From Phyllobates terribilis (lineage: Eukaryota): DNA of 64,000 bases. Positions within the stretch are counted from its first letter, which is position 1. Each line of letters starts with the position of its first letter. Position numbers and translations under genes: made by a program. The stretch lies in NCBI RefSeq assembly GCF_046119375.1, contig NW_027362764.1:102486001-102550000 (forward strand), given 5' to 3'. This document shows, piece by piece, positions 1 through 62,122 of the stretch. The notes under the pieces were generated by a model. It was not told where the DNA came from, searched no databases, and saw only the letters and a list, made by a program, of their open reading frames with translations.

Positions 1-2191
<2,191 letters not shown>

Positions 2192-2521: not shown

Positions 2522-3480
2522 ACCTATCTACTTATTTTCCCACCACTAGATTAATTTATACAGAGGAGTAGATTGTAAAATTCGGTCACTTGTTGGGGGT
2601 TTCCTCTGTTTAGGCACCTCAGGGGCTCTCCAAATGCAACATGGCGTCCGCTATCGATTCCAGTCAAATTTCCATTCCAAAAGTCAAATGGCGCTCCTTA
2701 CCTTCCGAGCCATGCCGTCCGCCCAAACAGTGGCTTTGCACCACATATGGGGTATCAGCGTGCTCAGGAGAAATTGCACAACACATTTTGGGGTCCATTT
2801 TTTCTGGCTGCCCTTGTGAAAATTAAAAATTTGAGGTTAAAGTAGCAGTTTTGTGAAAAAAAGTTAAATGTTCATTGTTTTCTTCCACATTCCAAAAATT
2901 CATGTGAAGCACCTGAAGGGTTAATAAACTTCTTGAATGTGGTTTTGAGCACCTTGAGGGGTGCAGTTTTTAGAATGGTATCAGTTTTGGGTATTTTCTG
3001 TCATAAAGGCCCCTCAAAGTCACTTCAAATATGATGTGGTCCCTAAAAAAATGTTTTTGTAAATTTTGTTGTAAAAATGAGAAATCGCTGGTCAACTTTT
3101 AACCCTTATAGCTTCCTAACAAAAAAAATTTTGGTTCCAAAATTGTGCTGATGTGAAGTAGACATGTGGGAAATGTTATTTATTAACTATTTTGTGTGAC
3201 ATATCTCTCTGATTTAAGGGCATGAAAATTCAAAGTTTGAAAATTGCAATATTTTCAAAATTTTTGCCAAATTTCCGATTTTTTCACAAATAAACGCAAG
3301 TGATATCAAAGAAATGTTACCACTATCATGAAGTACAATATGTCACGAAAAAACAATCTCAGAATCAGGGGAATCTATGAAGCATTCAAGAGTAATTACC
3401 TCATAAAGTGACAGTGGTCAGAATTGAAAAAATTGGCCCGGTCACGAAGGCAAAAACAGGCTCTGGTGCGAAGTGGTTAA

Positions 3481-3850
3481 AAGATTCTGGAGTAGGCCAC
3501 ATAACTATAACTGTGGTTTTGCAGTTCCACGGTTCAAATCTCTGTATTATCCAGCTTTTGGCCTTTTTTCCGTTAAAAAGAAACAGTGTTAGTGTGTCAC
3601 TGACTGTTCAGACTCAAATATATCTGTTTAAAAGATTCTGGAGTAGGCCACATAACTATAACTGTGGTTTTGCAGTTCCACGGTTCAAATCTCTGTATTA
3701 TCAAGCTTTTGGCATTATTTCGGTAAAAAAAACCAGTAATAGTGTCTCCCTGACTGTTCAGACACAAATATATCTGTTTAAAATATTCTGGAGTAGGCCA
3801 CATAACTATAACTGTGGTTTTGCAGTTCCACGGTTCAAATCTCCTATTTA
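3481..3850. repeat. ~150-bp subterminal tandem repeat x3 of hAT copy A
   Basis: AAGATTCTGGAGTAGGCCACATAACTATAACTGTGGTTTTGCAGTTCCACGGTTCAAATCT at 3481, 3632, 3782. Confidence 0.9.
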
Positions 3851-3902
3851 TTACCCTTTTTCCATTGATAGTGCGAGTGTAAGCTATTTTACTTCATTTA
3901 CA

Positions 3903-4965
3903 ATGGGCAAGGCGCGTGGCAAGGGACGTGGAACTGGACGTTCTAGTGATGGTGCGTGTAGAGGACGGGGCCGTGGCCAAGGTGAAAATGTGCCACAACC
4001 AACAGCCACATATTCTCACTCCCACTTCTTGACCGAATTACTAGGGAAGCACACAGCAACACCAGTATTGCGAACTGATCAGTGTGAACAGGTTATTAAT
4101 TGGATAGCAGATAATACTTCCAGTTACCTGGGAACCACCACCTCTGGTCTGTCTTCCACACGGTCAAGTTTTAATAGCCGTGAGTCTCGACCGCATACTC
4201 CTCCTCACCCTGATGCTCCTTCTTCCCACCATGCCGAGTGTCGTCAGACAGCAACTGATCCCACAGTTGGACACTCTGAAGAGCTGTTCACTGGTCCATT
4301 TCCATATTTGTGCCCCTCGCCTGCTCCACTTAAAGTGGTGGAAGAGGAGATCCATGTAGCGATACCCAAATATTTGAACAGCCACGGCCACAGGAAGGCG
4401 ACGCTGGCAATTTGTCACAAGAGGTGGACGATGACGAGACACAATTGCCACAATGTGAGGAGGAGGATCGTGGTGGAAGATGAGGAGGTGGTGTATGATC
4501 TAGTAACTGACCCAATGTGGCAGGAGGGCACGCAGAGCGAGGCCAGCAGCACACAGGGGGAAGGAGGCAGAGTACCCCAACAGGCAGGAAGAAGCAGTGT
4601 GGTGGCCGCAGACAGAAGGCGGGCAATAGTTCCCCGTAACACCAACACGAGGGACGTTGCCAGTACAACTGGTAGGTATTTCAGAGTCTGGAATTTTTTT
4701 AAAGACTCTGCTGATAACCCCAAAAAGGCCATTGGTACCACCTGCCATGCCAGCATCAGCAGGGGTGACAAAACTATCAGCCTGACCACCACCAGGCACA
4801 TGTCAGCAAAGCACCCGACTTTGTGGAGCGAACCCCAGGGTCCACGACCAGTGTCAGCGGGTGTCACCACTGCTTCTTCCACTGTTGTGCGTGTAATAGA
4901 ACCCCCTGCTGTGCGTGCAAGGCAATCCCTTGTCCATACTGCATGCAAAGATGCTAAGTGTATGG
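3903..4965 (+). pseudogene. hAT transposase N-terminal fragment with BED zinc finger
   Basis: MGKARGKGRG start; VWNFF..KAIGTTCHASISRG..RHMSAKHP (first BED Cys is Gly, 3 codons deleted relative to the other copies); truncated after the BED finger. Confidence 0.85.
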
Positions 4966-5032
4966 GCTGACAAACATTTACCCCTGGGGGGTATACATGA
5001 ACATACTGTCTAAAAATTTTTTTTTACAGGCA

Positions 5033-26028: not shown

Positions 26029-26126
26029 CTAATGACAGACTGGAAAAATGCATCTTCTTCTGATGCTGCGAGCAGCCCTGGATAACCCACGCCGGCAGGA
26101 TGATATCATCCGGCGGAAGATGGAAC
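26029..26126 (-). CDS. MAST-like terminal coding exon
   Basis: TCTCTTCTCACAG|[31 protein letters not shown] then TAG (26031-26029). Confidence 0.75.
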
Positions 26127-29100
26127 CTGTGAGAAGAGATGTAAAACTAATGTAAGTAATGGGGCTCCATATTAGGGGATACTGCTGTGGTGTCATGGTG
26201 GCAGGACGGTAAAGGAATTTTATCCGTACAGAGGAATGGGATCATTGTCAGTCATCATACATGTGACAATCCCACCACTGACAGATAACATCTGCTCCAC
26301 ATGAATTATTCTCACTGGCCGACATGAGACAACATAGACCTTATTGTCACACTTACGTCTTCTAGGTTCTTGCTCTTCTACTATTTGGGCGTTTTGCTCT
26401 TCTACCAGTTTTAAAGCAGATTTATTCTTCTTCTCAACTGGAAATTCATATAAAAAAGTCATAAACACAAGTTAATTATCATTTTCAGTTATCATACATG
26501 TGACAATGCCCCCACTGACAGATCACATCTGCTCCACATGGATTATTCTCACTGGCCGACATCAGCCTACATGGAGCTTATTGTCACACTTACCTCTTAT
26601 AGGTTGTCCCTCTTCTACTATTTCTGCTTTTTGCTCTTCTCCCAGTTTTGATGCAGATGTATTATTCTTTTCAACTGGAAATTTATATAAAAAAGCAAGA
26701 AAAATAAGTCAACGATAAACTACTATAAGATTAGATTCATATCTTTATCTAGCAAAATTATTTTATTTTTGTACCCTATAGTCCTGGGAATCTGGCATTG
26801 CACCATAAGGCCTTGTTCACATGAAGCATTTTTGCAGTATTTTTTGCAGCATTTTTTTCATTCAATTTATAAGCTACTTTTTACAGTGAAAGTAAAAGCT
26901 ATGAGATTTCAGAAATCTCATGCAGACATTTGTTTTTTTTTTCCTAACGGGATTTGAAAACTGCAATGTTTTTGAAATCTGCAACATGTCAATTCTTTCA
27001 GCGTTCTTGCAGTGCTTTTTCAACCACAGAAAGCAATGCGCATGCATGGGGAAAGGCCAAAGAGCGTCTGAGCATGCGCACTATAGTACTTTAATCTGCC
27101 CTTAGCAGGGCAGAGAGAAGAGCACCTGCGCAGAAGCAAAATGAAGGACACTCTGTGAATGATATAGGACGCATCATCCACAAAGCAGAGAAGGAGAGCG
27201 GCATCACAGGAAGAGCGGAGGCTCCGGATCAAGACCAGTGACGCCCATCGGACCGGACCGCACCATCTGTGAGTATAATAAAAGGTCTTTATTTTGTTTT
27301 GCAGGGCGGCTTGGAGACTTATATACAACTTTCCAGAATGCTGTAACACAGGGCTGAAAGGTTGTGGTTTTAGGTTATATGGGAAAAATCTGGTGACAGG
27401 TTCTCTTTAATATGACATTAATAACAGCAATGTTCTCATATAATCAATTACATAAAATATTTGTCTAACATTAAGGGTATATGTAGGGTCTGTTTGGGGC
27501 CTGATGGGGCCATGGGCACAGTACTCAGTATCAGTATCAGGCACCAGCTGTATGACCCCTTATATCTTTTCATGCACAGCACAAAAGATTGAGTATTTGA
27601 TACATTGAAGTGTTGTATTGTTGATCGTTTTAAGGGCGCAAAAAAAGCAGTGATCTTCTGAGCATTTATGTAACATTCACATTACACCTTTTGATCATTG
27701 CCTACAACAAGATGTCTTATAGACCTGCACATACCTGACAATGGGGGAGAGGATGACTTGTTGTTTTCAGTAGTCAAACACTGAATGTCACCATCACTTA
27801 TGGTAGGAGAAGATTCTTTCTGCCTGTTTGGTACAAGAAAAACAAATAAATTACAAGTGAATGCAATTAAAAATACAAGAACTCCTGTCTGTAAGGGCAA
27901 TTAAGACACTTGGTCAAAATGGAGGGGATACCTTTCACAGGGCTCACTTCCATCAGCAAGAATGAAGAATAACTAGTAATAAAGGGCTTTAATGAACTGA
28001 AAAAGAAAGGCTGGTCACAATGATCAGCTGTTATCACCAGCGCTATCACAAGCCAAATACCACAGTCATCAGCAATCATGGGGTGGTGGGTTCAGGATTT
28101 AGTCTTGTATCATATGTGTCTTGTATTTGGTGTTCTGAACATATATAAGTACTAAGCCCCATAATAATAATCTACTCACACGTCTGGGTGTTTTGTGCTG
28201 GTCTCTAGGGAACAATCTGGAGATGACTCGCGTTCTTCTTTGCTCATTGTCCTGCTATTGGTTGTATATAGCTAAAACACACAGAGTAAAATTAAATAAA
28301 TATATTTGTAAACAATTTTAGTTACAGTTTTATGGATTTACTGATCACATACTTACCATAGACAGTCTTTGAGAAGAGGATACATAGTTTAAGCTTTCTG
28401 GCCAGTCATTCACCTCACTTGCGTCACCCTCATCTGAATCTGTATGTTTGGGTCTCCTAATGCCAACTACAAAATACAAATATTATCAGAAATTATTAGT
28501 ATAATTACAGATAATCACCATGTTATTGCTAATAATGGACACATTTTTTCAAATAAAATGGAAGACGAGACAAACAGCAGCATGAGCTAGATGACGTCTC
28601 AATCTACTTACTAGGAAAGTAGTGGGTGTCCACCTCTGATACTAGATTTGGCTTAAACAGTGGCTCCTGATTGTGAATGTTCTCAAAGTCTAACTCCCTC
28701 AGGAATGGATGACTCTTGATCTCATTTGCTCCTCCTGAAAATGGTAGATAAGAAAAAATTGATACAGACAATGTCAGGAAGACTGCTCTATATCTGTACA
28801 TTGTATGTTAATTGGAACTGAAGACATTGCAGAGCCAAAATATTCTGTAAGTCATAGCATGAAGAATGAGGAATGGACAAGAAGGTAAAGCAGAGTCCTC
28901 CACGCTGATCCTCACGGAAATTATCTTTTTGTCAGGACACAGAGGAGTTATAAGTTACATTACCTGTTCCGAGTCTATGTGCTGGATTTTTCCTGAGGAG
29001 CTTAATCATGATGTTCTGAGCATCGAGAGGAAGAGCAGAATTGCGAAATTTCCTAGTGATTTCATCTGTTATAAAAAAAAAAGTAATAATTACAGAAAAG

Positions 29101-32100
29101 AAAATCTCTACATTTACTATAATTTAAACACATTATCAAAAAACAACAAATAACTAAACCAAAGAATTAACCTAAAAACCGAACCAGTTACTAGGACATC
29201 ACACAGCATTCAGATTATTTTACTTACTCGTGATGATACTGTGGAAAATAGCACTTCTGCAACGTCCTCTAAATGGCACATGCCCAGTTAGAAATTTATA
29301 TATGATGATCCCTATTGACCACCAGTCAATAGGCCTTCCATAGCCCTTCTGTAAAATGACTTCTGGGGCTACAAAACAAAAGGTGCCAGTCGTCTGGAAA
29401 CCAACAGAACAATGAGAAGATGATCAATGAATATAATTGTGACAAATAATATCAGTAGAAACATTTTCTAGATGAGAATATATCAGAGAAGCAGAAATAG
29501 ATCAGATCTGTAAAGAATAAGTTTCTGTAAGTAAAACTGACCCCATCATCAGGGAACTCTCTGGTGATGTCCACAGTTGAAGCCTTGTATATGTCTGATG
29601 TTGGTCTCATGAGGCCGAGTTTTGAAAGGCCAAAATCGGTGACTTTAATATGTCCAGTTGACGATATCATGAGGCTGTAAAAAAATATATATTGTCAGTT
29701 TTAAGTAATAACCCATAGACAGTATATCAAACTATAACTATATTTCCCTTTATTATCCCACAGGGGTCACTTACTTTCCAGGCTTCAGGTCTCGGTGCAC
29801 CACACCATAGCTGTGCAGATATTCCACAGCAAGAACTGTTTCTGCAATGTACATGCGGGTCAAGGAGAGGGGTAAAGGACTATATAACGTCATAAGACTG
29901 GCACAGTCTCCTCCTAAAGCAGAAAGCAAATATGACAGGTGAGGGTTTGTTACAATGTAAATTACACATGATGAGTGTGAATGAGAGATAAGCTGAGACA
30001 TTGGGGCAGGGTGTCAATAATAGAGATACACTGTGTAATGTAGAGCGTATACTGTATACTGCAGAGTAATCCTATATAAAAAGGGAGGTGAGCTCTGCCC
30101 GCTGCCGGTAACCTCCTAGATTGCACTGTCAATCTCCGACAGCGGCATTTACAGCACACGGCCCGGAGGCGAGCTGCTCCATGCACTCATCACCCCCCAT
30201 TCCATGTCTATGGTTTGTTATGGCTGCTGGGGGTCTGCGGAAGACCTCTATTCCTGCCATTATGGTACTTCTGTGAAGACCAGTGTGTAGCTTGGCTTCA
30301 TAGGGGACCAAGATTTGCACCATATGCTGCAATACCATGGTATCACAGTACATAGTAAAAGCGGTTATATGATAACAAGTTCAAGTCCCTCATGGAGGCT
30401 AAAAAATAAAGTAATAATAAAAATGTTTGGGTAAATAAAATAAAATATAAAAATCACTTTTTCCCCATTAAAACTAAATAATGAAAAAAAAAAAAAAACT
30501 CAGAACACATTGTAGTGTTTTGGTTTCTTCCTATTGCATTTTTTTGTGATGTTGGGGCAATGAAAATGATTTATCTACTACAATGTGTTATCAATAAAAT
30601 CATCAGCTCGCTTAGAAAAAAATAAGACAATAAAAAGCTCCATTTGCTGAAAAAGGAAAATGTAAATTTTCCTTTTTTTTATAAATTTCCAAGGATTTTG
30701 TCAACATAAAATAAAACATATTTATATACATGTTTGGTATGACTGAAATTGTAGTAACTTGTATACTTAAGATACCAGGTCATTTCCATCACACAATGAA
30801 CACTGTAAAAATAAAACTTAAAAAACAATTGCGGAATTGTAATTTTTACATAATTCCACGGCACTTGGATTTTTTCCCCACTTTCTAATACATTCGATGG
30901 TAAAGTGATCAAAACTACAGATGGTTCTACATAAAAACACGTCATGCGGCTATGTGGATGGAAAAATACAAACATTATGGCTCTTGGAAGAATGGGAGGA
31001 AAAAGCGAAAAACGGGAAATTGTCAGGTCAGGAAGAGGTTAAAAAAAATCTGTCAGAAAGATTTAACCCTCCTAAACTGTTTTTCTGAACATGTAGGTCA
31101 ATGAAATATAAATACATTGGTCCCTTTATATATTTGAGCAGATATGGGTTGGATATTGATACAATGGATATGTCTTACCTGCTTCAAAGTCCATGACCAT
31201 ACACAGATGTTCTTTAGTTGGGAAGGAACAAAACGTGGAGACCACAAAGGGACAATCGGAGAATATTGCGATATCCCTTTCTAGATAGGCCGATTCCAGA
31301 AACATTGGATGATGCAGGTTACACCTGGATTGTTTCTTCATGGCGAATACCTTGTTTGTGTCCTTATGACGCACTAAGTGGACGGCCCTGTAGAGGAGAA
31401 AAATCCATAATTTATAATAAATTCCTACTAACAGTCTGTCTATATGTCAAATGATCCTCTGTACTAATAGTTAATACTAGATGTACGGCCATCACTAGAA
31501 ATCAATGTCTGGAAATACATAAAATAACACCACATTAATGATCACTTATGGAGGTTCTCATCCATGTCACATCCCAACTGAGCTGAATAGATGTGGACTA
31601 GATGACTAGATGTGGATTACATCTACTCCAAAGTGGTATCAATAACAACAACAGCTCGCCACACAAAAAGCAAGTCCTTACAAAGCTCTATCGAACGAAA
31701 AATAAAAATGTGACAGGTCTTGGAAAACAGTAACATTTAGATGTGGACTTATATACAGTAATTTCACTATGGCAGGACTTATAGACAGAGGCATCATCAT
31801 AAGCAACTTGTGAAAAATGTAGATTATACAGAAAGCTCACCCAAAAGTTCCACTGCTGATCTCTTTGATCTGGTTATAGTCGCTCTTACTAGGCTTTCTC
31901 ATTGGGCTCAATAATCCAATTACGGCCTAAAAGAATAAGAAATGACAATAAGACATAAAAGTTGCAGGAAAATAAAAAGCTCCAGATGCAGGAACTTCTC
32001 CTCTACATTATGTCCCCACTGATTACACTGCAGCAGATGTAGAGGGCATGATACAAGCAAGACGCTCCACAGACACTATTAAATAATAACGGGATCCGTA

Positions 32101-34440
32101 CTTTTCGGATTATAAGATCCATTCTTTTTCCCAAAAAATTTTTGGGGGAAAAGGGGGGGGGGGGTGTTTTATAATCCGATTGTAGCTTATTGGGAGGGGG
32201 CGGCTGCGGTGGAGCAGGGTCCCAGGAGGAGGGGTTACTGCTGCAAGAAGCTGGCGACGGCAGGAGTGGGGCGATGCTGCAGGCCCCAAGCTGGAAGGAA
32301 GGGGTGTTTGGAGGTGCAAGGCTGCGGAGGGCCGCGGGCTTTAAGAAAATGTCGGCGGAGTCCCAGCACTTCCTATTGTTTTCATTGGGATGGACTTTGG
32401 TAAAATGGCCGCATGCGCAGATTGAGATCTCGGCTCCCCACTCCTGCCGCAGCCAGCATCCTGTAGCAGCAACCCTGCCCCCTGGGACCCCGCTCCACCT
32501 CAGCCGCTCCCCCCCAAAAAGCCACCATAAAATCAGACAATAACAACAATTCATTTTTTACAAAAAATTTCCTCCCCAAAATTTTGGGCGTGTCTTATGG
32601 TCCACAAAATATGGTATATCATTCTACTGCAGCGGAGGATAAGGGACATCACACAGAGGAGACAGGAATAATAATGCTAACATCACTGATAATAACTCCA
32701 ATCTACATCAAGAACAGATATCCCTCTGTCATATGGGGTATAATATGGGATGTGTAATTCATACCCCGTTATCTGATTATATACTTACATTGCCAGATTT
32801 GGGGATCTTTGGTGTCTCACATATTCCCCCATCAGCATTTGCCGGCGGATCAGTTGCCTCTAATATAATGATAAATAATGAAGAGACATCATGTATTAGA
32901 CGATATCAGTACTTAATATATAACACATCATTATAAGGAAGGAAAGATAAGACCTCTGTAAATGGTATAATACTAAATATATGGATATTCTGCACATACT
33001 ATGTATACTTATGGTACATCCATAGATAGATATACTCCACCATAAATGTGTAATAATTGTTCAGGATCTGACAATGACTTGAATGGGGATCCTATGAGGC
33101 TCTTTGTACATTTTAAGGCGTATAATATCCCAGAGGAGAGAACCAGAGGGGTTTTCAGAATGACATGGACCTTCTCCATTATAGTCTACCGGAGGTTCAA
33201 GAGCCGTCACCGGCCTCAAACAGAGGATGAAGAGTAAATTTATATATTCTCGGGTGTCTCTATAATATTAATATGTTTGTAGGAATATGAAATGTTCGGC
33301 TTACCTTCAATCAGATCACTTTTTAGCCCTGGCTGACTGGTATTAGGGTCAGCCATATTTAGGTTCTGCCCATCTTCGGAGTCGCCGTCCGGTGTTTCCT
33401 GATGGATATAATATATACAATTAATATAACATTTCACAAATACTAAATTACCATATACATGAGACAGAAAGGACTAAGTCAGGATTTACATGATAATTGC
33501 AGTATTGCGTGGACTATACACGACCGCTCCCTCCAGTAAGTCCACATTAATATATAAGGGACTAGTATATACAACGGTTCTCCAATAACATCTATTATCA
33601 GAACTGCAGCATTTACAAGAAGGAAGATTGTGAATTTATAGGAAGACAGAGGTGATATACAAAGTCCGCACCACTGAGTACAGACTGTCACCACAGAGGA
33701 TGGAGCCGCAGAGACAGACTGCCATAAATACCCTTCGTCCGCCTGGAGCAGACAGGGAGGCCTCTAAAACAAAAAATCTGCCATTCTGCCATATGTCTGG
33801 TAATCTGGAGAAGATCATACAATAAGGACATGAGATATAGAAGATGAGGGATCCTTACCAGGCGCTCCAGTGAATGGGCCGGATAATCTAGTACATACAG
33901 GAATACGTACAGGACATTTTGGGCCAATTGTTTAAAAAAGGCCAAATCTGCACTTTGGGATCTTTCTTCAGCCTATAAAGATGGAAATAAAGGAAAATAA
34001 TGAGAAAAAGTGGAGAATGTAGGACGCCATTTATGTTACCATTTTACTCCTGCTATCTGCAGCTACAATTACTACCTATCTGGGTATTTGGTATAGACTA
34101 TATATTATATTGGTCTAGGCCAAAATACATATTTTATGTAAATGAACTTGCATTTTGTTAATATTATCCTTTATTATTTTTACACACTTTGCACAGATTG
34201 TCTGCTAATTACCTGTTGTATTAATTTCCTGATGTTCATCTGTAAATGCTCAAGATATTCTGAGCTTATACGACCTTGGTGGTATTTGGTCAGGCAATCT
34301 CTCACTAGCTTCATAACCAGCCGGTAAGTGAAGCTGAGGACGCCATCGGGTAGTGGTAGCACAAAGTCAGGGTCATAGGTAGTAAGAATCCCCTGGAGTA
34401 GTGCCAACTTCTCAAGTTTGTCTGGAGGAATTTCAGACAT
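26029..34440 (-). CDS. MAST: MAST-family (microtubule-associated Ser/Thr) kinase-like gene, 18 coding exons, ~695 aa, no PDZ; family-level call only
   Basis: DUF1908-like N-terminus ([23 protein letters not shown]), AGC kinase domain (SSGTFG, FAMKK, HRDLKPGN, DFG, APE) and AGC tail (DTHYF). Hand-assembled exons sum to 2088 nt in frame with consistent intron phases (assuming a 72-nt exon 3). Confidence 0.88.
26357..26437 (-). CDS. MAST-like exon 17 (81-nt repeat copy 2)
   Basis: TTCCAG|[26 protein letters not shown]|GTAAGT; phase 1-1. Confidence 0.78.
26594..26674 (-). CDS. MAST-like exon 16 (81-nt repeat copy 1)
   Basis: TTCCAG|[26 protein letters not shown]|GTAAGT; phase 1-1. Confidence 0.78.
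27735..27823 (-). CDS. MAST-like exon 15
   Basis: AAACAG|[29 protein letters not shown]|GTATGT; 89 nt, phase 2-1. Confidence 0.78.
28180..28271 (-). CDS. MAST-like exon 14
   Basis: TTTTAG|[30 protein letters not shown]|GTGAGT; 92 nt, phase 0-2. Confidence 0.8.
28357..28466 (-). CDS. MAST-like exon 13
   Basis: TTGTAG|[36 protein letters not shown]|GTAAGT; 110 nt, phase 1-0. Confidence 0.85.
28612..28734 (-). CDS. MAST-like exon 12 (AGC C-tail)
   Basis: TTTCAG|[40 protein letters not shown]|GTAAGT; 123 nt, phase 1-1. Confidence 0.9.
28964..29065 (-). CDS. MAST-like exon 11
   Basis: TAACAG|[33 protein letters not shown]|GTAATG; 102 nt, phase 1-1. Confidence 0.9.
29228..29393 (-). CDS. MAST-like exon 10 (APE; absent from the ORF track)
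   Basis: TTCCAG|[43 protein letters not shown]...SIIT|GTAAGT; 166 nt, phase 0-1. Confidence 0.93.
29542..29674 (-). CDS. MAST-like exon 9 (DFG)
   Basis: TTACAG|[22 protein letters not shown]...TREFPDDG|GTCAGT; 133 nt, phase 2-0. Confidence 0.93.
29775..29913 (-). CDS. MAST-like exon 8 (catalytic loop)
   Basis: CTTTAG|GDCASL...[23 protein letters not shown]|GTAAGT; 139 nt, phase 1-2. Confidence 0.93.
30310..31038. mobile_element. piggyBac-like non-autonomous element in kinase intron 7 (left end unclear)
   Basis: Ends ...GGTCAGGAAGAGG|TTAA (31039-42); AT-rich interior resembling 34629-35490. Confidence 0.5.
31179..31387 (-). CDS. MAST-like exon 7 (subdomains II-V)
   Basis: CTACAG|[18 protein letters not shown]...AYLERDI...[10 protein letters not shown]|GTAAGA; 209 nt, phase 2-1. 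Confidence 0.93.
31841..31926 (-). CDS. MAST-like exon 6 (kinase Gly-loop)
   Basis: TTTTAG|[29 protein letters not shown]|GTGAGC; 86 nt, phase 0-2. Confidence 0.9.
32096..32614. mobile_element. Tc2/Kanga-like MITE in kinase intron 5
   Basis: CCGTACTTTTCGGATTATAAGA ... TCTTATGGTCCACAAAATATGG|TA inverted ends. Confidence 0.75.
32789..32859 (-). CDS. MAST-like exon 5
   Basis: TATTAG|(E)[23 protein letters not shown]|GTAAGT; 71 nt, phase 1-0. Confidence 0.75.
33305..33398 (-). CDS. MAST-like exon 4
   Basis: CATCAG|[32 protein letters not shown]|GTAAGC; 94 nt, phase 0-1. Confidence 0.75.
33692..33763 (-). CDS. MAST-like exon 3 (donor uncertain)
   Basis: TTTTAG|[24 protein letters not shown]; LLQADEG resembles MAST LLEAAEG. 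Donor GTGACA is weak; an alternative phase-0 donor GTAAAT lies near 33616. Confidence 0.5.
33859..33972 (-). CDS. MAST-like exon 2
   Basis: TTATAG|[38 protein letters not shown]|GTAAGG; 114 nt, phase 0-0. Confidence 0.88.
34213..34440 (-). CDS. MAST-like exon 1b (ATG exon)
   Basis: [26 protein letters not shown]...NIRKLIQQ then GTAATT donor, phase 0. If it is instead an internal exon, the acceptor is at 34421. Confidence 0.8.
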
Positions 34441-34628
34441 TTCAAGAAAATCCAATCGCAGTCAATATATCACCAGCTTCGTAGCCAAACACTGACAACA
34501 ATGTCACCGGGGCAGTAAACATTGCATACATAGTGGCTGTGCATTATGATGTCATAATGGAATCTTGTGGTGGAATATTAACATGTCATCAGTGATGTCA
34601 TCATGGAATCCGGTGATGGAATCTTAAC

Positions 34629-35490
34629 CCGTTTACAACCTTGAACATATAGGTACGTCCAAGCTTGTATTTCTGCCTTTTTTAGGCAGCGCCAGAGCCC
34701 ACATCTTTCCCCGCACACAAAAGCTGATGTGCTCAACTGTCATATGCCTCAAATGGACACAGGTGGATCTTGTCTGTTAACTAGTTAAATGCCGTTGTCA
34801 ATCACTGACAACGGCATTTAACACGTGCCAGTCAAAAGTGCATCAAAAGTCCCTCTTATCTGCGCCCCTGTCACGTGATCGCAGGTTGCCGATGTGTTAT
34901 CATGACAGCCGGGGGTCTGCAGAAAATCCCTGTGCCAGTCATTGTTAATTTTTTTATGAATGCCGGCTTGTCGCCGGCGTTTAAAGAAGATTGTGATTTC
35001 TGATATACATAGCATTGCTGAAGCCCCGGATGATCGCTGCTTCAAATCTCCTAAGGTGGCTATTGAAGCTAGTAACAAAAAAAAAACACAAAAGTTCAAA
35101 TCGCACCCCTTTTGCCTCATTGGAAATAAAACAATTGAAAAATATAAAAAAAACATATTTGGTATCACTGTGTTTAGAAATGTCCAATCTGTCAAAATAT
35201 AAGCTAAATTAATTAATCTGTAAATGGCGTAACCAGAAGACAATCAAAATGCCACAATTACGTTTTTTTGGCCGATGCAACATTGCAATAAAATGTAACA
35301 ACATGCGATCAAAATATCCTATCTACACTAAAATGGTATAAATAAAAATGGAAGCTCAGGGCTCAAAAAAACAAGCCATCACCAAGCCCCAAATCCCAAA
35401 AAATGGAGACGCTACGGGTCTCTGAAAATGGGGACATAAGCTAATTTTTTTTTCTTACTAAGTCGGATTTTTTTTTCACCACTTAAATAA
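34629..35490. mobile_element. piggyBac-like non-autonomous element between exons 1a and 1b
   Basis: Starts at TTAA|CCCGTTTACAACC, exactly where homology between the two duplicated blocks ends. Confidence 0.5.
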
Positions 35491-35534
35491 AAAAAGAACT
35501 TATAGCTTGTATTTTATGAATATTATCTTCTTAC

Positions 35535-35762
35535 CTGTCGTACTAGTGTCCTGATGTTCATCTGTAAATGCTCAAGATATTCTGAGCTTATACGACCTTG
35601 GTGGTATTTGGTCAGGCAATCTCTCACTAGCTCCATAACCAGCCGGTAAGTGAAGCTGAGGACGCCATCGGGTAGTGGCAGCACAAAGTCAGGGTCATAG
35701 GTAGTAACAATCCCCTGGAGTAGTGCCAACTTCTCAAGTTTGACTGGAGAAATTCCAGACAT
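35535..35762 (-). CDS. MAST-like exon 1a (duplicated ATG exon)
   Basis: [37 protein letters not shown]...NIRTLVRQ then GTAAGA donor, phase 0. Confidence 0.7.
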
Positions 35763-37649
35763 TTCAAGCAAATAGCAAATCCAATCGCAGTCAGTATATC
35801 ACCAGCTATAAAGCCAATCACTAACAGCAATGACACCGGGGCAGTAAGCACTTGAATAAATGCTGGGGGTGCATTATGATGTCATGATGGAATCTTGTGG
35901 TGGGGGAATCAGTGATGTCATTTAGGAATCCGGTGATGCAATCTTAAAGGGGCATCTTACCATAAAAGGACGTTGCCTAGCAACAATTAAGGTGGCAACA
36001 CCATAGGCTGAGCATCAGTAACAGACTGAGGCATGGGAAGAAGAACCATGGCTTTGATCAGTAGGGCAGGCTTTTACATCTGTCTGTTCCCCCATAAAAT
36101 ATTTAAAACAGAGTTTGGATGCTAAATGTTCTTCAGACGTGGAAACATTTGCTTTTTCTAGAGATTATGACCAGGGATGGACTGGGAATAAAATACAGTC
36201 CTGGAATTTCAAAGCATGCTAGTCCATGCTGTCGCCGCCCCTCTCCCCAGATTGGGGTCTCTGATACTAATTTTATGCTGCCTGAATGAAATTAAGATTT
36301 ACTAAATATATTTCCAATAATACTGCTTTATTGGATTTCATAATAATAATATTGCAAAATAAGGTTATGTTTTTACAATGAGGTTTTGCTAAGTATTTTC
36401 GCTGAAATCCACAACATACAGAATCAATTTCTTTTGCAATTATGCGGAGCTTTGTATGCAGATTTTCTCTATAGAATTGCATTAGATGAGGAAAATACGC
36501 TGGTTAAAAATACAAAGCGCATAAAATCCACACATGACTCGATCATTAAAGTTTTATTAAAGTACGAGGAAGTATCAAAAATAAAGCAGATTCATTCAAT
36601 ATGGTCGGTGGAGGGCTTAATAGTCGCCTTGTGGAAGTCAATGACGGGCTTAATAGTGCTGCAGTGTCCAGAAACAGTTCCAGGACTTTTAGACTGAGGC
36701 CCCCCTTTCTTCCACTATAGAGAGGGAAATATGTGTATAAGAGCATCCCAGAAGGGTTCCAAAAGTTTGGGTGAAATATATACCAAAGAGACAACAACCG
36801 CAGAGTCAAAAAGAGACAAAAATGCAATAAAAAGGCAAGTAACCTAATGTACTGAATAGGTGGAGAAATGCAGCAGAATGCTGCAACGTCAAAAACTCAT
36901 CAACTACTCATCATGGGAACTTAACCTAACAAACACATAGTACCAGAGCAGATCCAAATATTACCAGAATATACAGTGGTGATAGTGCCGCCATATTGAT
37001 CATTAACCAAAACCAATGTACTAGTACTGATGTCACCACCATACAGTGTCCATATAATGGTACTATCAGTTTTACACCAGTGCTCTTCAGACCATATATG
37101 TGTGCACTGTGCAGGTTTTCACCAGTGACGTTCTCAATGATCGCGGTCATTCATTTTTCCTTTCCTTTTCCATTCGGCCTAAAACGCCATGATCACTTCT
37201 TCAACCCATAACTCGTCCCTGCAAAATGTAACACAGACACCTCTTTGACTTACTCCCCCATTTCTGTACAAACCATGTATTGCAATAATGAGTATCCTAG
37301 ACAGTAATAAAGCCCCTCTGTGTCCTGTATGGTAATACTAATCTCCTTTTGTGTCCCACACAATACCAGTTTCACCCTTCATGCCCCTATACAGTAATAA
37401 TGATCCCTCTGTACTTGCTTAGAGTAACTATCAGTACTGATAGTGGGGCCGTGGCCTTATAGAAACAACTCACCAATTCTGCATTTGTCACCCACTCCTG
37501 GTTTTGGCTTCCACTCCTGAGAAAAAATACTGACCGAATACTGACCAAATACTGATAGTGGGGCCGTGGCCTAAAGGTCAGTCTGTAAGAAGAAAGTGAG
37601 TCTAGGAAAATAAAAGAAAGGCATACTTACTATTCTTTAACGTAAAACC

Positions 37650-38234: not shown

Positions 38235-39378
38235 CAGCGGGTGAAATAAGTATTTCACCCGCTGTATATATACAGTTTTCTAAGTAAATATATTTCTGAA
38301 GGTGCTATTGACATGAAATTCTCACCAGATGACAATAACAACCCATCCAATCCACACAGGCAAAGAAATCAAACCATAGATGTCCATAAATTAAGTCATG
38401 TGTAATAATGAGAAATGACACAGGGAATAAGTATTGAACATGCTTATTGAAATGTATTTAATACTTCATACAAAAGCCTTTATTGGTGATGACAGCTTCA
38501 AGACGCCTCCTGTATGAAGAAACTAGTAGCATGCATTGCTCAGGTGTGATTTTGGCCCATTCTTCCACACAAACACTCTACAACTCCTGAAGGTTCCATT
38601 GGCGTCTTCTATGAACTCTGAGCTTTGGTTCCTTCCATACATTTTCTATTGGATTCTGGTCAGGTGATTGGCTCGGCCATTCTAGCAGCTTTATTTTCTT
38701 TCTCTGAAACCTATTGAGAGTTTCCTTGGCAGTGTGTTTGGGTTCATTGTCTTGCTGAAATGTCCAACCCCATTTCATCTTCATCATCCTGGTAGATGCC
38801 AGCAGATTTTCATCAAGAATGTCTCAGCACATTTGTCCATTCATCCTTCCTTTTAAATATATGAAGCTTGCCAGAGCCGTAAGCTGAACAACCCCAGATG
38901 ATGTTCTCACCTCCAGTTTTCACTGTTGGTAAGGTGTTTTCGGGATGATGTGCAGTGCCTCTTGGCCTTCAAATATGTTGGGTATTATGGCATTCAAAGA
39001 GTTCAATTTTCATCTCATCTGACAAAACTACATTCTCCCAGTCTTTCACAGGCTTGTCTAAATTTTGTTGAGCAAACTTTAAATATGCTTGAACATACTT
39101 TTTGTTCAGCAATGAAGTCTTGCGTGGTGACATGCATACAGGCCATGGATGTTGAGTGCATTACTTATTGTTTTATTTGAAACAATTGTACCTGCTGATT
39201 CCAGGTCTTTCTGTATCTCCCCACAGGTGTTCCTTGGCTCTTGGACAACCCTTTTGATTCGTTTTACTCCTCTGTCTGAAATCTTGTGGGGTGCACGTGG
39301 TCATGGCCAGTTCATAGTAAAATGATGATCTTTCCACTTCGGGATTATGGCCCCAACAGTGCTCACTGGAACCTTCAA
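38235..39378 (-). mobile_element. Tc1 remnant (3' TIR plus C-terminal transposase)
   Basis: TA|CAGCGGGTGAAATAAGTATT; [25 protein letters not shown]. Confidence 0.85.
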
Positions 39379-39689: not shown

Positions 39690-40020
39690 ACAGGACTAAC
39701 AGTGGAGAAGAGCAGGATGTAGCAGAGTTGTGTGTGTAGATGTAGGTGAGCCGTGTGTGTGGATGTAGCCGAGCTATGTGTGTGTGTATATGTTGCTGAT
39801 CTGTGTGTGTGTAGATGTACTTGAGTAGTGTTTGTGTGTAGACATAGCTGAGCTGTATGTGGATGTAGGTAAGCTGTGAGTGTAGCTGTAGCTGAGCAGT
39901 GTGTGTATGTAGATGTTTCTGTGCTGTGTGTGTGTGTGTAGATGTAGTTGAGCAGTGCGTGTGTGTAGATGTAGCTAAACTGTTTGTAGATGTAGCTGCA
40001 CTGTGTGTTAATGTAGCAGA
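39690..40020. repeat. (TG)n/GTAGATGTAG low-complexity minisatellite
   Basis: Repeated TGTGTGTGTAGATGTAG-like units. Confidence 0.8.
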
Positions 40021-41329
40021 CCAGTGTGGGGAGTCAAAATACTTTGTAGGTTGGGCTTGTGGGGGCATAAGACTGTGTGGTGGGAAATCCAATATAGGGA
40101 CATTACACTGTGTGTGGAAGGCACTGTGGGGAGGGGGGCATGAAATAGGTGCTATACTGTGTGGGAACACCAATGGTCTTCACTAGGGGAATATTGCTGT
40201 GTGGTCTGTGAGGATGTATAGGAAGCACTGGCTGAGGTTAGAATACTGTCTTAAGATATAAATTCTGTCAGCGCACTAGAGGCACTGCAGTTTTTGTCCC
40301 TCTTTCTTATCATTCAAAGTTGGGAAATATGAGAACTTATTAATTAGTAAGTGAGACAAAATCATTCCCCCCAATACATCTGTTAAACTACAGATAAAAT
40401 GGACTTTAAAATACAAAAAAGGGGACGTGATAATATAATCTCTGAGCGCTGCAGCAGTTTTAGATTATGCAGTGACTGATTACATATGATTTTCTGCTCT
40501 AGCGGCAATTAATTGAAGGAGCGGGAGAAATAACAGGGATAACATTTCTATTCAAATGAGGCCAATTTTGAAGAATAAGATATCTGCCATCTGTTAATAT
40601 CAGATGAAACGGCGTCATTTTTGCTGGTGGGTAGGCTCGGTGATGCAATGTTATTGCTGCACTGATCAAATATGACCATTTTGGCAATGGAACGACACTT
40701 CAGAAGCGCACATCACAGCAGCTGATTCAGCTTTTAGAGCTCAGCTAAATTATATGAGAACAGTAACAGCCATTGTTAAAAAAGGCTGTTTGGAAAACAG
40801 TTTGTGACATTTCTATACGTCTTTTTAAATAAAGGTATAAAATAACCATTACTTCTGTGTTATCCTGTGTTTTTACCACACACTGCCACATATATTGTAT
40901 ATTCTTGCCAAATACATTTGTAATCTGGTATAACAAAAATTCAAGCTTAAGGGCTTTAAAGGATGCTGCAAAATTTTATATTTGCAACATACACGATCTG
41001 TCATGAATTTCTTCCAAATTTGCAGCTGTTTCACCCATTGCAATAATGCATAATCTGCATCATGAATAATCTTCTGCAGCAGATTTCATGCATCTGTTGT
41101 ATATGGATATGGAGAAATTCCAATGTAAACCTTGGATCTAAGGGGTAGTGTTTCTCCTTGTGGAGAGTGGCATGCCAGGTCTGGAACACCAGTATGAGGA
41201 GACTTAAATGCCTTCCATGCTCCTCTGGGAAATTAAATGTGCAAATTGTCTCTTCAGAGAGAAAGAGGACTTGAACTCTAGTGCCACGTATTGGAAGTAG
41301 CAATCCTACAAGTCATTATCGACCCTTTA

Positions 41330-59193: not shown

Positions 59194-62086
59194 TTAAGTA
59201 TATGCTGAAATCTGCCTGGTATCTAGAAATGCATCCAGTCCCCGCTTGAACTGGTGTAGTGAATCCGACATTACCGTCTCCTCACTCAGTGAATTCCATA
59301 TTCTCACTGCTCTTACCGTAAAGAACCCCTTCCTATGCTGGTGCTGAAACCTTTTCTCTTCCAGTCTTAGTGAGTGCCCTCTTGTTACCGTAATATCCCT
59401 CCTTTTGAACAAATCCCAGGCAAGATCTCTATACTGTCCCCTAACATATTTGTACACATTTATTATGTCCCCCCTCAACCTTCTCTTTTCCAGGTTGAAT
59501 AGTCCTAGTTTTGCCAACCTCTCTGGGTATTGCAGTCCCTCCATTCCCTTTATTAATTTTGTTGCCCTCCTTTGTACCTTTTCAAGCTCATTTATATCCT
59601 TTCTATATATTGGGGCCCATAACTGAGCACAGTATTCCAAGTGTGGTCTGACCAGTGCTTTGTACAGTGGAAGAACAATGTTCTCATCCTTTGCAGCTAT
59701 ACCTCTTCTGATACATCCCATTACCCTGTTTGCCCTTACAGCAGCGGCCTGACTTTGGGCACTCCAATTTAGTTTGCTATCAATCAAGATGCCCAAGTCC
59801 TTCTCCATCTCTGAATTCCCCAATGATTTCCCATTCAGTGAGTACTGGTGACTTCCATTTTTCCTTCCCATATGTATGACCTTACATTTCTCCTCGTTAA
59901 ACCTCATTTGCCATTTAATGCTCCACCTACCCAGCTTATCCAAATCCCTCTGTAGGTCTGCACTGTCCTCTTTTGTATTAATTGTTTTACATAACTTTGT
60001 GTCATCTGCAAATATTGATATTTTACTATTTATCCCGTTGACTATGTCGTTAATAAAGATATTAAATAACATTGGGCCTAGTACAGACCCCTGTGGTACC
60101 CCACTAGTGACGCTTACCCAATCTGAGTATATTCCATTTATAACCACCCTCTGCCTTCTATCCTTTAGCCAGTTAGCTACCCACTTGCAGACATTTTCCC
60201 CCAGCCCCATCATTCTCATTTTGTATGCCAACCTATTATGTGGCACGCTATCGAACGCTTTTGAGAAGTCGAGATACACGACATCCACTGGTTCCCCCTG
60301 ATCTACTCGAGAGCTAACCTCCTCGTAGAAGTCAATCAGGTTTGTTTGGCAGGAGCGATTCCTCATGAATACATGTTGGTTCGGGATTAAAAGATTATTA
60401 GCATCAAGATGCTCCGTAATTGCCTCTTTAATGAAGCTTTCAAAAATTTTGCCCACAACGGACGTCAGACTCACCGGCCGATAGTTTCCGGCGTCACTTT
60501 TCGCTCCCTTTTTGAATATTGGCACTACATTCGCCTGTCGCCAATCAAGTGGCACAGACCCAGTCTCAACAGAGTCCTTAAATATAAGATATAACGGTCT
60601 GTCTATCACATTACTTAGTTCCCTTAGTACCCGTGGGTGTATGCCATCAGGTCCTGGTGATTTGTTTATTTTAATGTTACTGAGGCGTTTCTGTACCCCA
60701 GCTTGGGTTAGATTTGTCATACTTAGTGGAGGATTAAGTTTGTCACTTCTCATTTCTCCTGTTAGTTCGATTTCCTTTGTGAAAGTTGTCGAAAAAAAAT
60801 TATTTAATAGATTAGCTTTATCCTCATCTTTCTCTATGATTTTGCCTTCCTCACTTTTTATCGGTCCAATATTATCCGATTTAATCCTTTTACTATTTAT
60901 ATACGTAAAGAACAGTTTGGGATTTGATCTACTTTCCCTAGCAATACGTCTCTCTGTTTCCTCCTTCGCTATTTTTATTTGTTTTTTACAGGTTCTCGTT
61001 TTTTCCTTGTAACACATTAGTGCCTCCTTACTGTTTTAATCTCTTGAATGCCTCTTTTTTGCTATTTAATACCCCTTTTACGTTCTTGTTCAACCATATT
61101 GGTTTCCTCTTATTTCTGGCCCTTTTATTCCCATACGGTATATATCTCTCACACTGAGTATTCAGAATTCTTTTGAAGGTTTCCCATTTACTATTCGTAT
61201 TCCTTTGATTAAGAACTTTGTCCCAGTCAATAAGTTGAAGGCTTTCTTTCAGCTGATCAAACTTCGCCCTCCTAAAGTTTAATGTTTTTGTTGTTCCCTT
61301 ATTGATAACCCTACTGAAGGGCATTTTGGAGTCGATAATATTATGGTCGCTATTACCTAGGTGCCCCCCTATCTGTACCTCAGTTATTCTATCAGGCCTA
61401 TTAGTCAATATTAAGTCCAACACGGCCTTCCCTCTCGTTGGTTCCTGCACTAGTTGGGAGAGATAATTATCCTTAATATTTGTCAAGAACCTTTTTCCTT
61501 TCTGAGATCTACAGGTTTCTGTTTCCCAGTCAATATCCGGGTAGTTGAAATCCCCCATTACAATCACTTCATTATGTTTTGCTACTTTGTCTATTTGTCC
61601 TAATAGCAGATTCTCATTCTCCTCTGTTATATTTGGTGGCTTATAGCAGACCCCCAGTAATATTTTATTATTATTTTTAGTTCCCTCTATCTCTACCCAC
61701 ATGGACTCGACCCCCTCTTCTCCCTCTCCTATATCTTCCCTTAGTCTGGGTTTTAGACATGACTTTACATATAAGCAGACTCCTCCGCCTTTCCCCTGTT
61801 TCCGGTCCCTTCTAAATAAACTATAATCTAATAAATTTACCGCCCAGTCGTAGCTATCGTCTAGCCAAGTCTCTGTTATACCTACGATGTCATACCTCTC
61901 CTCCGATATAAGCGCCTGCAGCTCATCCGCCTTATTGGTCAGGCTTCTTGCGTTGGTCAGCATGCAAGATAAAACTTTGGGGTTATTTAGCATCCTATTC
62001 TTCTCTAACGATCTAACTGTACTATCCCCACCCCCCTCTCCACCCTCATTATATTCACTTCTCCCCTTCCCCCTTGCTTGCCTCAC
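59194..62086 (-). pseudogene. CR1 ORF2: APE endonuclease + reverse transcriptase, one frameshift near 61030
   Basis: TNARSL, GITETWL, VMGDFN, LDLILTN, SDHN; KSPGPDG, YLDFSKAFD, GVPQGSVLGP, FADD. Confidence 0.95.
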
Positions 62087-62122
62087 ATCCCACCTATTTC
62101 CTTGGTCCCCCCCCCCCCGTCT

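What the first reader, a model, noticed from the sequence alone, without database searches (positions are those of the whole stretch)
26029..35762. Compact, PDZ-less, highly diverged MAST-like kinase with an intact reading frame
Canonical MAST1-4 have a long N-terminus, DUF1908, kinase, PDZ and a very long tail. This gene starts within DUF1908, keeps MAST intron positions through the kinase, and replaces the PDZ/tail with short novel exons. No stops or phase errors across 18 exons despite heavy divergence suggests a functional, lineage-specific paralog, possibly from an expanded family.
Basis: partly seen in the sequence, partly recalled or inferred. Interest (0 to 1): 0.78.

Follow-up and report, generated by a model that had tools for sequence, protein, structure and literature searches.

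The report
Short frog-only MAST4-derived kinase gene
This is an intact, transcribed and correctly spliced gene for a shortened MAST-type protein kinase, one more member of a large, fast-evolving family seen here only in poison frogs and a few related frogs; gene catalogues name the family automatically, but I found no paper describing it.

Summary
On the minus strand, 35762 (ATG) to 26029 (TAG), I read 17 exons, not 18. They give a 2016-nt reading frame (671 aa), and all 16 introns are GT-AG. RNA-like contigs from four samples in two studies carry exon-exon joints exactly at 9 predicted borders, and loose ends confirm 2 more.

The protein has four parts: the C-terminal third of DUF1908 (a predicted four-helix bundle), a complete AGC kinase with all catalytic residues, a variable repeat linker, and a conserved basic, cysteine-bearing tail. 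The 64-kb window holds no PDZ exon and no N-terminal DUF1908 half.

The eight kinase exons have the same lengths and phases as in a bird MAST3 gene. This points to a DNA-level partial duplicate, not a retrocopy.

In a tree, 41 short frog proteins form one clade on a long stem, sister to frog MAST4. Grouping them with MAST3 or MAST2 is rejected.

The window gene's own lineage changed 3 of 100 near-invariant MAST columns against 35 of 277 others, which indicates constraint.

The first coding exon exists twice, and which copy is used is not settled.

This scan already reported the same family on other DNA of this genome. dN/dS could not be run, and tissue is unknown.

The parts
35535..35762 (-). 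Exon E1a: first coding exon, upstream copy. ATG at 35762-35760; 228 nt; ends in phase 0; donor CAG|gtaaga. Encodes the start of the DUF1908 remnant.
   Evidence: sequence and model; Pfam DUF1908, E 8.5e-10; colinear with P0003 residues 1-77.
34213..34440 (-). Exon E1b: second copy of the first coding exon. Same length and phase, own ATG, donor CAG|gtaatt. It has 10 nt differences from E1a (8 change the amino acid, 2 do not). No in-frame acceptor lies upstream of its ATG, so it is an alternative first exon or unused.
   Evidence: Use of E1a versus E1b was not tested with RNA.
33859..33972 (-). Exon D2, 114 nt, phase 0 to 0; DUF1908 remnant continued.
   Evidence: The D2-to-D3 junction is seen as a loose end at 33399.
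33305..33398 (-). Exon D3, 94 nt; acidic linker.
   Evidence: Joint 32859|33305.
32789..32859 (-). Exon D4, 71 nt; linker.
   Evidence: Joints 31926|32789 and 32859|33305.
31841..31926 (-). Exon K1, 86 nt; start of the kinase, glycine-rich loop.
   Evidence: Joints. Same length and phase as the bird MAST3 exon.
31179..31387 (-). Exon K2, 209 nt; catalytic Lys215 and alpha-C Glu234.
   Evidence: Joint 31387|31841. Exon identity. The K3|K2 joint is not among the listed rows.
29775..29913 (-). Exon K3, 139 nt; ends inside HRDLKPGN.
   Evidence: In one search this exon has very high depth and loose ends into unlike sequence, which I read as paralogs sharing it. Its two joints are not among the listed rows.
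29542..29674 (-). Exon K4, 133 nt; supplies the Asn of HRDLKPGN across the junction, plus DFG and the activation segment.
   Evidence: Joint 29393|29542.
29228..29393 (-). Exon K5, 166 nt; APE and DWW.
   Evidence: Joints.
28964..29065 (-). Exon K6, 102 nt; ends at RLGTG.
   Evidence: Joints.
28612..28734 (-). Exon K7, 123 nt; end of the kinase and start of the AGC C-terminal extension.
   Evidence: Joints. One variant at 28678 (Ile to Leu) in three of the four runs laid (X1, X5, X6).
28357..28466 (-). Exon K8, 110 nt; AGC tail with the hydrophobic-motif region (NYVSSS).
   Evidence: Joints.
28180..28271 (-). Exon T1, 92 nt, phase 0 to 2; same phases as the canonical 146-nt exon after the kinase.
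   Evidence: Joints.
27735..27823 (-). Exon T2, 89 nt; Ser-rich linker.
   Evidence: Joint 27823|28180 and the loose end at 27735 that reads into R1.
26594..26674 (-). Exon R1, 81 nt, phase 1 to 1; first copy of the repeat exon inside a 237-bp tandem duplication.
   Evidence: (family D3). The T2-to-R1 junction appears as a loose end.
26357..26437 (-). Exon R2, 81 nt; second copy of the repeat exon. It has 14 of 81 differences from R1, against 11 of 116 in the adjacent intron.
   Evidence: No RNA evidence (outside the stretch laid).
26029..26126 (-). Last exon, 98 nt including TAG at 26031-26029. It encodes most of the conserved basic tail; over the last 33 residues there are 11 Arg/Lys, no acidic residue and 3 Cys.
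   Evidence: No RNA evidence (outside the stretch laid).

Best explanation
This is a working gene for a 671-aa short MAST kinase, one member of a frog-specific family that arose from MAST4 by partial duplication at the DNA level.

Shown:
- It has 17 exons with GT-AG introns, and it is transcribed and spliced at the predicted borders.
- The copy begins 18 nt upstream of a canonical DUF1908 exon border, in what looks like the old polypyrimidine tract and acceptor. It therefore keeps only the last third of DUF1908.
- It keeps the whole AGC kinase and its C-terminal extension, with unchanged exon structure.
- It lacks the PDZ domain and the long MAST tails.
- It ends in tandemly duplicated 81-nt repeat exons and a basic, cysteine-bearing tail conserved across the family.

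Inferred:
- It is an active Ser/Thr kinase, because Lys215, Glu234, HRD, Asn314, DFG and APE are all present.
- Targeting or regulation has moved from the PDZ domain to the new tail. The tail may work as a polybasic, possibly acylated, membrane anchor, or through its RRxS-like sites as a substrate or pseudosubstrate.
- The retained helical bundle still serves the kinase, since it is at least as conserved as the kinase itself.
- Family members differ in substrate choice. The residue between P and N of HRDLKPxN is invariant Asp in canonical MASTs but is E, D, G, Q, K, A or T in the family (Gly here). By my own knowledge of PKA, this position (Glu170) contacts the substrate P-2 arginine.
For: - Gene model and open frame.
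- Spliced contigs from 4 samples in 2 studies, with joints at 9 predicted borders and 2 more seen as loose ends.
- Pfam DUF1908 plus Pkinase.
- No PDZ or N-terminal exons in the 64-kb window.
- Kinase exon lengths and phases identical to bird MAST3.
- Family clade (support 100), sister to frog MAST4 (94). Grouping with MAST3 rejected at p-AU 0.0013 and with MAST2 at 4e-5.
- The window model keeps 44 of 47 columns invariant across 52 family and canonical sequences; the 3 changes are conservative.
- Derived changes on the window lineage: 3 of 100 at near-invariant columns against 35 of 277 elsewhere, Fisher p 0.006.
- Only 2 of 40 listed variants and 0 of 9 indels fall in exons, which make up 24% of the stretch; binomial p 0.0013.
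- Tail motif shared from dendrobatoids to Rhinoderma and Engystomops.
- AlphaFold2 model of the closest full-length paralog P0162: four helices at residues 6-111 (pLDDT about 70-89), folded kinase, disordered linkers, helical tail at low confidence.
- Variability at the HRDLKPxN position.
Against:
- The runs are labelled only as 'RNA?' and also hold unspliced contigs.
- The 5' end, the choice between E1a and E1b, and the last three junctions have no RNA evidence.
- The two joints flanking exon K3 are not among the listed rows.
- E1a and E1b differ by 8 non-synonymous and 2 synonymous changes, so at least one copy looks unconstrained.
- The window gene alone has Phe for the otherwise invariant Tyr of GTPxY(x)APE, which might lower activity.
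- The roles proposed for the tail are inference only, and its helix is predicted at pLDDT below 50.
Confidence: 0.78

Rival explanations
1. It is a transcribed but functionless young duplicate that is drifting and simply has not yet acquired a stop codon.
For: The family evolves fast, with long branches. The window gene has three unique changes at otherwise invariant columns, including Tyr to Phe next to APE. The twin first exons differ mostly by amino-acid changes. The gene lies in transposon-dense DNA.
Against: The frame is open over 671 codons and all 16 introns are canonical. Derived changes avoid conserved columns, 3% against 12.6%. Variants and indels avoid exons. All catalytic residues are kept. 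The gene is spliced in four samples.
Confidence: 0.1
2. It is part of a longer gene. Unseen coding exons upstream (rest of DUF1908) or downstream (PDZ) are joined in the real transcript, so the compact model is an artefact.
For: The 5' end was not tested with RNA. The sequence tttctccag just inside exon E1 could still act as an acceptor in phase 1. The window covers only 28 kb upstream and 26 kb downstream, and frog introns can be long.
Against: Dozens of catalogue proteins from five or more frog species start and end at the same points as this model. The stop follows the conserved tail. tblastn finds no PDZ or N-terminal DUF1908 anywhere in the window. RNA contigs run T2 to R1, not to a PDZ exon.
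Confidence: 0.05
3. The protein acts mainly as a non-catalytic regulator, for instance competing with full-length MAST4 through the retained helical bundle, rather than as a kinase in its own right.
For: The DUF1908 remnant is as conserved as, or more conserved than, the kinase between this gene and its closest paralogs (0.82 against 0.75). The substrate-contact position is no longer conserved.
Against: Every residue needed for catalysis is invariant across 46 family members and kept here. That pattern would not be expected in a pseudokinase.
Confidence: 0.07

Closest known systems
Canonical vertebrate MAST4 (e.g. frog MAST4, P0107, 2347 aa)
   Same: The same kinase subfamily. The short frog family is sister to frog MAST4 inside the MAST4 clade. 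A DUF1908 segment lies directly upstream of an AGC kinase with a C-terminal extension. The long MAST-type activation segment is kept.
   Different: It lacks about 350 N-terminal residues, DUF1908 profile positions 1-141, the PDZ domain and the >1000-aa C-terminal region. It gains repeat exons and a conserved basic Cys tail. The family is multi-copy and evolves far faster than the near-static canonical MASTs (branch lengths). The HRDLKP-D-N aspartate is not conserved.
Short 'MAST 4-like / 3-like / 1-like / 2-like' proteins of Ranitomeya, Dendrobates, Phyllobates, Anomaloglossus, Engystomops and Rhinoderma (RefSeq automatic names; e.g. P0162, P0153, P0003)
   Same: The same start point, domain order, repeat linker and tail motif. 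The window gene is sister to a 12-gene Ranitomeya clade with support 99.
   Different: The best identity is only 71-77%. The product of this window is not among the listed database proteins. It has 2 repeat exons, where P0003 has four repeat copies and the longer P0153 (1067 aa) evidently has many more. It has Gly in HRDLKPxN and a unique Tyr-to-Phe change, and a duplicated first exon.
Greatwall / MASTL
   Same: A MAST-related AGC kinase without a PDZ domain. It is the best-matching solved structure for the family kinase domain (E 1e-58).
   Different: By my own knowledge, not tested here, Greatwall has no DUF1908 and has a long insert splitting the kinase. The window gene has DUF1908 and uninterrupted MAST exon structure. 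No MASTL sequence was included in the tree.

Membership tests
MAST kinases (MAST1-4) | AGC-type Ser/Thr kinase domain with intact catalytic residues | tested here: met
   Pkinase hits on exon translations. The motifs GTFG, AMKK, LERD, HRDLKPGN, DFG, APE and RLGTGG are all present. 44 of 47 invariant columns are kept.
MAST kinases (MAST1-4) | DUF1908 domain directly upstream of the kinase | tested here: inconclusive
   It is present above Pfam's cut-off (38.5 and 41.5 bits against 27.5), but only profile positions 142-209 of 281 match in the exon and 142-237 in the paralog P0162. The N-terminal half is absent from the window.
MAST kinases (MAST1-4) | PDZ domain downstream of the kinase | tested here: not met
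   There is no PDZ match in 64 kb with ten canonical MAST queries. Family proteins have no PDZ Pfam hit, whereas P0107 has one.
MAST kinases (MAST1-4) | Placement inside the MAST clade in a tree, with shared exon structure | tested here: met
   It is nested in the MAST4 clade, sister to frog MAST4. MAST3 and MAST2 groupings are rejected. Eight kinase exons are identical in length and phase to bird MAST3.
Short frog MAST4-like family (undescribed; automatic database names) | Protein starts at the mid-DUF1908 exon | tested here: met
   Model residue 1 aligns to residue 1 (or within about 17 residues of the start) of most family proteins.
Short frog MAST4-like family (undescribed; automatic database names) | Conserved C-terminal motif (RRR-x-S-I/L-F/L-RR[14 protein letters not shown] followed by cysteines) | tested here: met
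   The window tail matches, and the motif is present in nearly all listed full-length members, including Rhinoderma and Engystomops.
Short frog MAST4-like family (undescribed; automatic database names) | Falls within the family clade | tested here: met
   41 rows including the window form one clade with support 100. The window sits in a 13-row subclade with support 99.
Processed retrocopy | Intronless copy of a parent mRNA | tested here: not met
   There are 16 introns at parental positions.

The most novel reading that the evidence does not exclude
The short frog MAST4-like genes are a rapidly diversifying set of active kinases. Their substrate pocket (the variable residue in HRDLKPxN) and repeat linker change from copy to copy, while a lipid- or charge-based tail sends them to a new cellular place. 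On this reading the family is engaged in some lineage-specific conflict or innovation of hyloid frogs (germline, immunity, or handling of dietary toxins), and the twin first exons give this locus two protein variants from two promoters.
Probability: 0.15. Interest if true: 0.75.

Novelty: new variant of a known kind. Interest (0 to 1): 0.45.

Why it matters
Canonical MAST kinases are nearly static in the domain tree built here, and, by my own knowledge, are single-copy genes tied to neuronal and cytoskeletal functions. Here one of them has spawned dozens of stripped-down, fast-changing copies in one frog lineage. These copies kept the catalytic core and one small helical module and gained a new conserved tail. 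That is a natural experiment on which parts of a MAST kinase are needed for what, and a candidate case of adaptive kinase diversification in vertebrates. For this particular locus the gain is modest. It is another intact, expressed member, with direct splice evidence, a MAST4 origin supported by tests, and a duplicated start exon.

Tried and rejected
- A word search with a single kinase exon gave only two fragments, because of the tool's length filter. One of them (P0001, locus L001) turned out to be a canonical MAST and was no use for dN/dS.
P0265 was not on record either.
- The Logan transcripts P0242 and P0320 are canonical MAST4 fragments, not family members.
- I looked for an origin of the tail in canonical MAST. 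There is only a weak 9-residue resemblance to the post-PDZ segment of MAST4 (E about 2-3), with a different exon phase. I treat this as a lead, not homology.
- I considered reading E1a spliced into E1b as an 18th exon. No in-frame acceptor lies upstream of E1b's ATG, and family proteins have a single copy of that segment.
- A retrocopy is rejected, because the introns are retained.
- Literature searches found nothing on this family. Two searches failed on term syntax.
Full report
**What is there.** The finding lies on the minus strand. ORF listing and six-frame reading show kinase and DUF1908 pieces between 35.8 kb and 26.0 kb. Pfam confirms DUF1908 (E 8.5e-10 and 1.1e-10) and Pkinase on the exon translations. 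The window is CpG-depleted, has no N runs and is rich in transposon remnants, as expected for a vertebrate genome.

**Gene model.** I read the splice sites by eye and used the closest database relative P0003 as a guide. This gave 17 exons:
- E1a 35762-35535
- D2 33972-33859
- D3 33398-33305
- D4 32859-32789
- K1 31926-31841
- K2 31387-31179
- K3 29913-29775
- K4 29674-29542
- K5 29393-29228
- K6 29065-28964
- K7 28734-28612
- K8 28466-28357
- T1 28271-28180
- T2 27823-27735
- R1 26674-26594
- R2 26437-26357
- last exon 26126-26029

Joined, they give 2016 nt, that is 671 codons plus TAG, with no internal stop. All 16 introns are GT-AG. Its count of 18 exons is one too many.

**Transcription and splicing.** Eight public runs from two studies of the same coded organism hold 56-67% of the sampled words of the locus. 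I laid four of them on 27650-33450. Their contigs contain exon-exon joints at 27823/28180, 28271/28357, 28466/28612, 28734/28964, 29065/29228, 29393/29542, 31387/31841, 31926/32789 and 32859/33305. Every one is a predicted border, and every one reads CT..AC on the plus strand, which is GT..AG on the gene's strand.

Loose ends at 27735 and 33399 read into R1 and out of D2, which confirms two further junctions. The two joints flanking K3 are not among the listed rows. K3 has very high depth and loose ends into unlike sequence, which I attribute to paralogs sharing this conserved exon.

The runs are labelled only as 'RNA?' and also hold unspliced contigs. Spliced joints cannot come from this genomic locus as DNA, so I read the runs as RNA with some pre-mRNA. 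The 5' end, the E1a/E1b choice and the junctions R1-R2 and R2-last were outside the one 6-kb stretch allowed.

**The protein.** The motifs GTFG (195), AMKK (213), LERD (233), HRDLKPGN (307), DFG (327), APE (367), DWW (381) and RLGTGG (444) are all in place, and so is the AGC extension. The Asn of HRDLKPGN is formed across the K3/K4 junction.

Of 47 columns invariant in an alignment of 46 family members and 6 canonical MASTs, the window protein keeps 44. The three changes (Ala to Thr, Tyr to Phe next to APE, Leu to Ile) are conservative but unique to this gene.

Downstream come a Ser- and acid-rich linker, two 81-nt repeat exons that lie in a 237-bp tandem duplication, and a tail whose last 33 residues hold 11 basic, no acidic and 3 Cys residues.

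An AlphaFold2 model of the closest full-length paralog (P0162, with the family alignment) predicts the following:
- four helices at residues 6-111, with pLDDT about 70-89
- a disordered linker
- a well-folded kinase
- a disordered repeat region
- a helical tail at low confidence

**What is missing.** tblastn of ten canonical MASTs against all 64 kb finds only the exons listed above. There is no PDZ and no N-terminal DUF1908 half. Pfam on the family proteins covers DUF1908 positions 142-237 of 281 and finds no PDZ. Frog MAST4 (P0107) has the full DUF1908 at 470 bits and a PDZ.

**Origin.** I mapped the exons of a bird MAST3 gene (L002) exactly. Its exon lengths around the kinase are 210, 102, 133, 68, then 86, 209, 139, 133, 166, 102, 123, 110, then 146 and 108. 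The window gene has 228 (from the ATG), 114, 94, 71, then the identical eight, then 92 and 89. All of these exons are entered in the same phase as their canonical counterparts.

This is therefore a DNA-level partial duplicate, not a retrocopy. The canonical exon border corresponds to window position 35744. The ATG lies 18 nt further upstream, in a sequence (tttctccag) that looks like the former polypyrimidine tract and acceptor. That last point is inference.

**Tree.** I built a tree of 62 sequences over 529 columns. The 41 short frog proteins form one clade (support 100) on a long stem (0.42), sister to frog MAST4 (94), inside the MAST4 clade (97, 96). Trees forcing the family together with MAST3 or with MAST2 are rejected (p-AU 0.0013 and 4e-5). 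The '1-like', '2-like' and '3-like' labels in the catalogues therefore do not reflect descent.

**The family.** A word search with P0003 gave 2239 hits at E<=1e-10. The top of the list is almost entirely short, PDZ-less proteins from Ranitomeya variabilis (about 40 clusters on at least five chromosome-scale contigs), R. imitator, Dendrobates tinctorius, Phyllobates terribilis, Anomaloglossus baeobatrachus, Engystomops pustulosus and Rhinoderma darwinii.

A search with the most basal member (Rhinoderma) added one transcript-like contig product (P0318) and otherwise only canonical MASTs of other vertebrates. I saw no member outside these hyloid frogs. The lists are truncated, so absence elsewhere is not shown.

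The window protein is at best 71-77% identical to any listed protein, and it is sister to a 12-gene Ranitomeya clade. Its own product is not in the listed set. The tail motif is shared across the whole family.

**Constraint.** I used two proxies instead.

The first polarises changes with the sister clade and the next outgroup. The window lineage changed 3 of 100 columns that are near-invariant in all MASTs, against 35 of 277 other columns (Fisher p 0.006).

The second uses differences between the window and the run contigs. Only 2 of 40 listed substitutions and 0 of 9 indels fall in exons, which make up 24% of the stretch (binomial p 0.0013 for the substitutions). One of the two exonic substitutions is synonymous and the other changes Ile to Leu.

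Both proxies point to purifying selection on this copy. In contrast, the two copies of the first exon differ by 8 non-synonymous and 2 synonymous changes. The repeat exons also differ more (14 of 81) than the adjacent intron (11 of 116). These numbers are small, but they fit relaxed or diversifying evolution in those parts.

**How it probably works.** This paragraph is inference. The protein should be an active basophilic-type AGC kinase. The residue between Pro and Asn of the catalytic loop is Asp in all six canonical MASTs, but it is E, D, G, Q, K, A or T among family members and Gly here. In PKA the equivalent Glu170 binds the substrate's P-2 arginine (my own knowledge), so family members may differ in substrate preference.

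The N-terminal bundle is at least as conserved as the kinase between this gene and its nearest paralogs (0.82 against 0.75), so it probably still works with the kinase. With the PDZ gone, the invariant basic tail with terminal cysteines is the obvious candidate for targeting (electrostatic or acyl membrane anchoring) or for autoregulation through its RRxS-like sites. None of this was tested.

**Twin start.** The first coding exon and roughly 185 bp upstream of its ATG are duplicated (35947-35531 and 34627-34209). The exon part is about 96% identical and the upstream part about 86%. Each copy has its own ATG and a usable donor, and either gives a 671-aa protein. E1b has no in-frame acceptor upstream of its ATG, so it can only be an alternative first exon or unused.

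**Literature and earlier notes.** Four full-text searches found no paper on short MAST-like kinases in frogs. Earlier follow-ups in this scan described the same family at other places of this genome (s1-217961, s1-224844), and my results agree with them. So the family is catalogued automatically but, as far as I could find, is undescribed in the literature, and this locus is one more member.

**Limits.**
- Tissue of expression is unknown, because run metadata are coded.
- The tree is a quick search.
- Exon structure was compared with MAST3 because no MAST4 DNA was available.

Noticed in passing
window 34209-34627 and 35531-35947: A roughly 418-bp segment holding the first coding exon and its upstream flank is present twice, 1.3 kb apart. 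The exon is about 96% identical and the flank about 86%. Between the copies lies a repeat element with a 17-nt perfect hairpin at about 34790-34830.
   Followed up: partly
window 26241-26712: A tandem duplication of a 235-237-bp unit (86% identical), each unit carrying one 81-nt repeat exon of the kinase gene. The exon copies differ more than the intron copies.
   Followed up: partly
window 950-2191 (+): An open 413-aa frame with a piggyBac-type transposase domain (DDE_Tnp_1_7, E 8.6e-64) and its zinc finger. It is preceded by another open frame at 375-968.
   Followed up: partly
window 59194-62716 (-): Three consecutive open frames of a LINE-type retrotransposon: a GDSL-esterase-like ORF (62123-62716), an endonuclease (61028-62086) and a reverse transcriptase (59194-61017).
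   Followed up: partly
window 38460-39300 (-): A Tc1/mariner-like transposase remnant broken by stops, upstream of the kinase gene.
   Followed up: no
window 3408-4970 (+): A 520-aa open frame with no Pfam hit. Its 5' part is an internal tandem repeat and its 3' part holds a BED-finger-like motif.
   Followed up: partly
window 39700-40180: A TG-rich imperfect minisatellite (six overlapping 82-nt copies, spacings 23-71 nt) that produces long spurious open frames on the minus strand.
   Followed up: no
window 29764-29941: Contigs of all four runs match exon K3 and then run into unlike sequence on both sides, and depth here is several-fold higher than elsewhere. Other family members evidently share this exon nearly identically.
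   Followed up: no
family proteins (alignment A1, P0162 position 308): The catalytic-loop residue HRDLKP-x-N is invariant Asp in canonical MASTs but takes seven different residues across the short frog family.
   Followed up: partly
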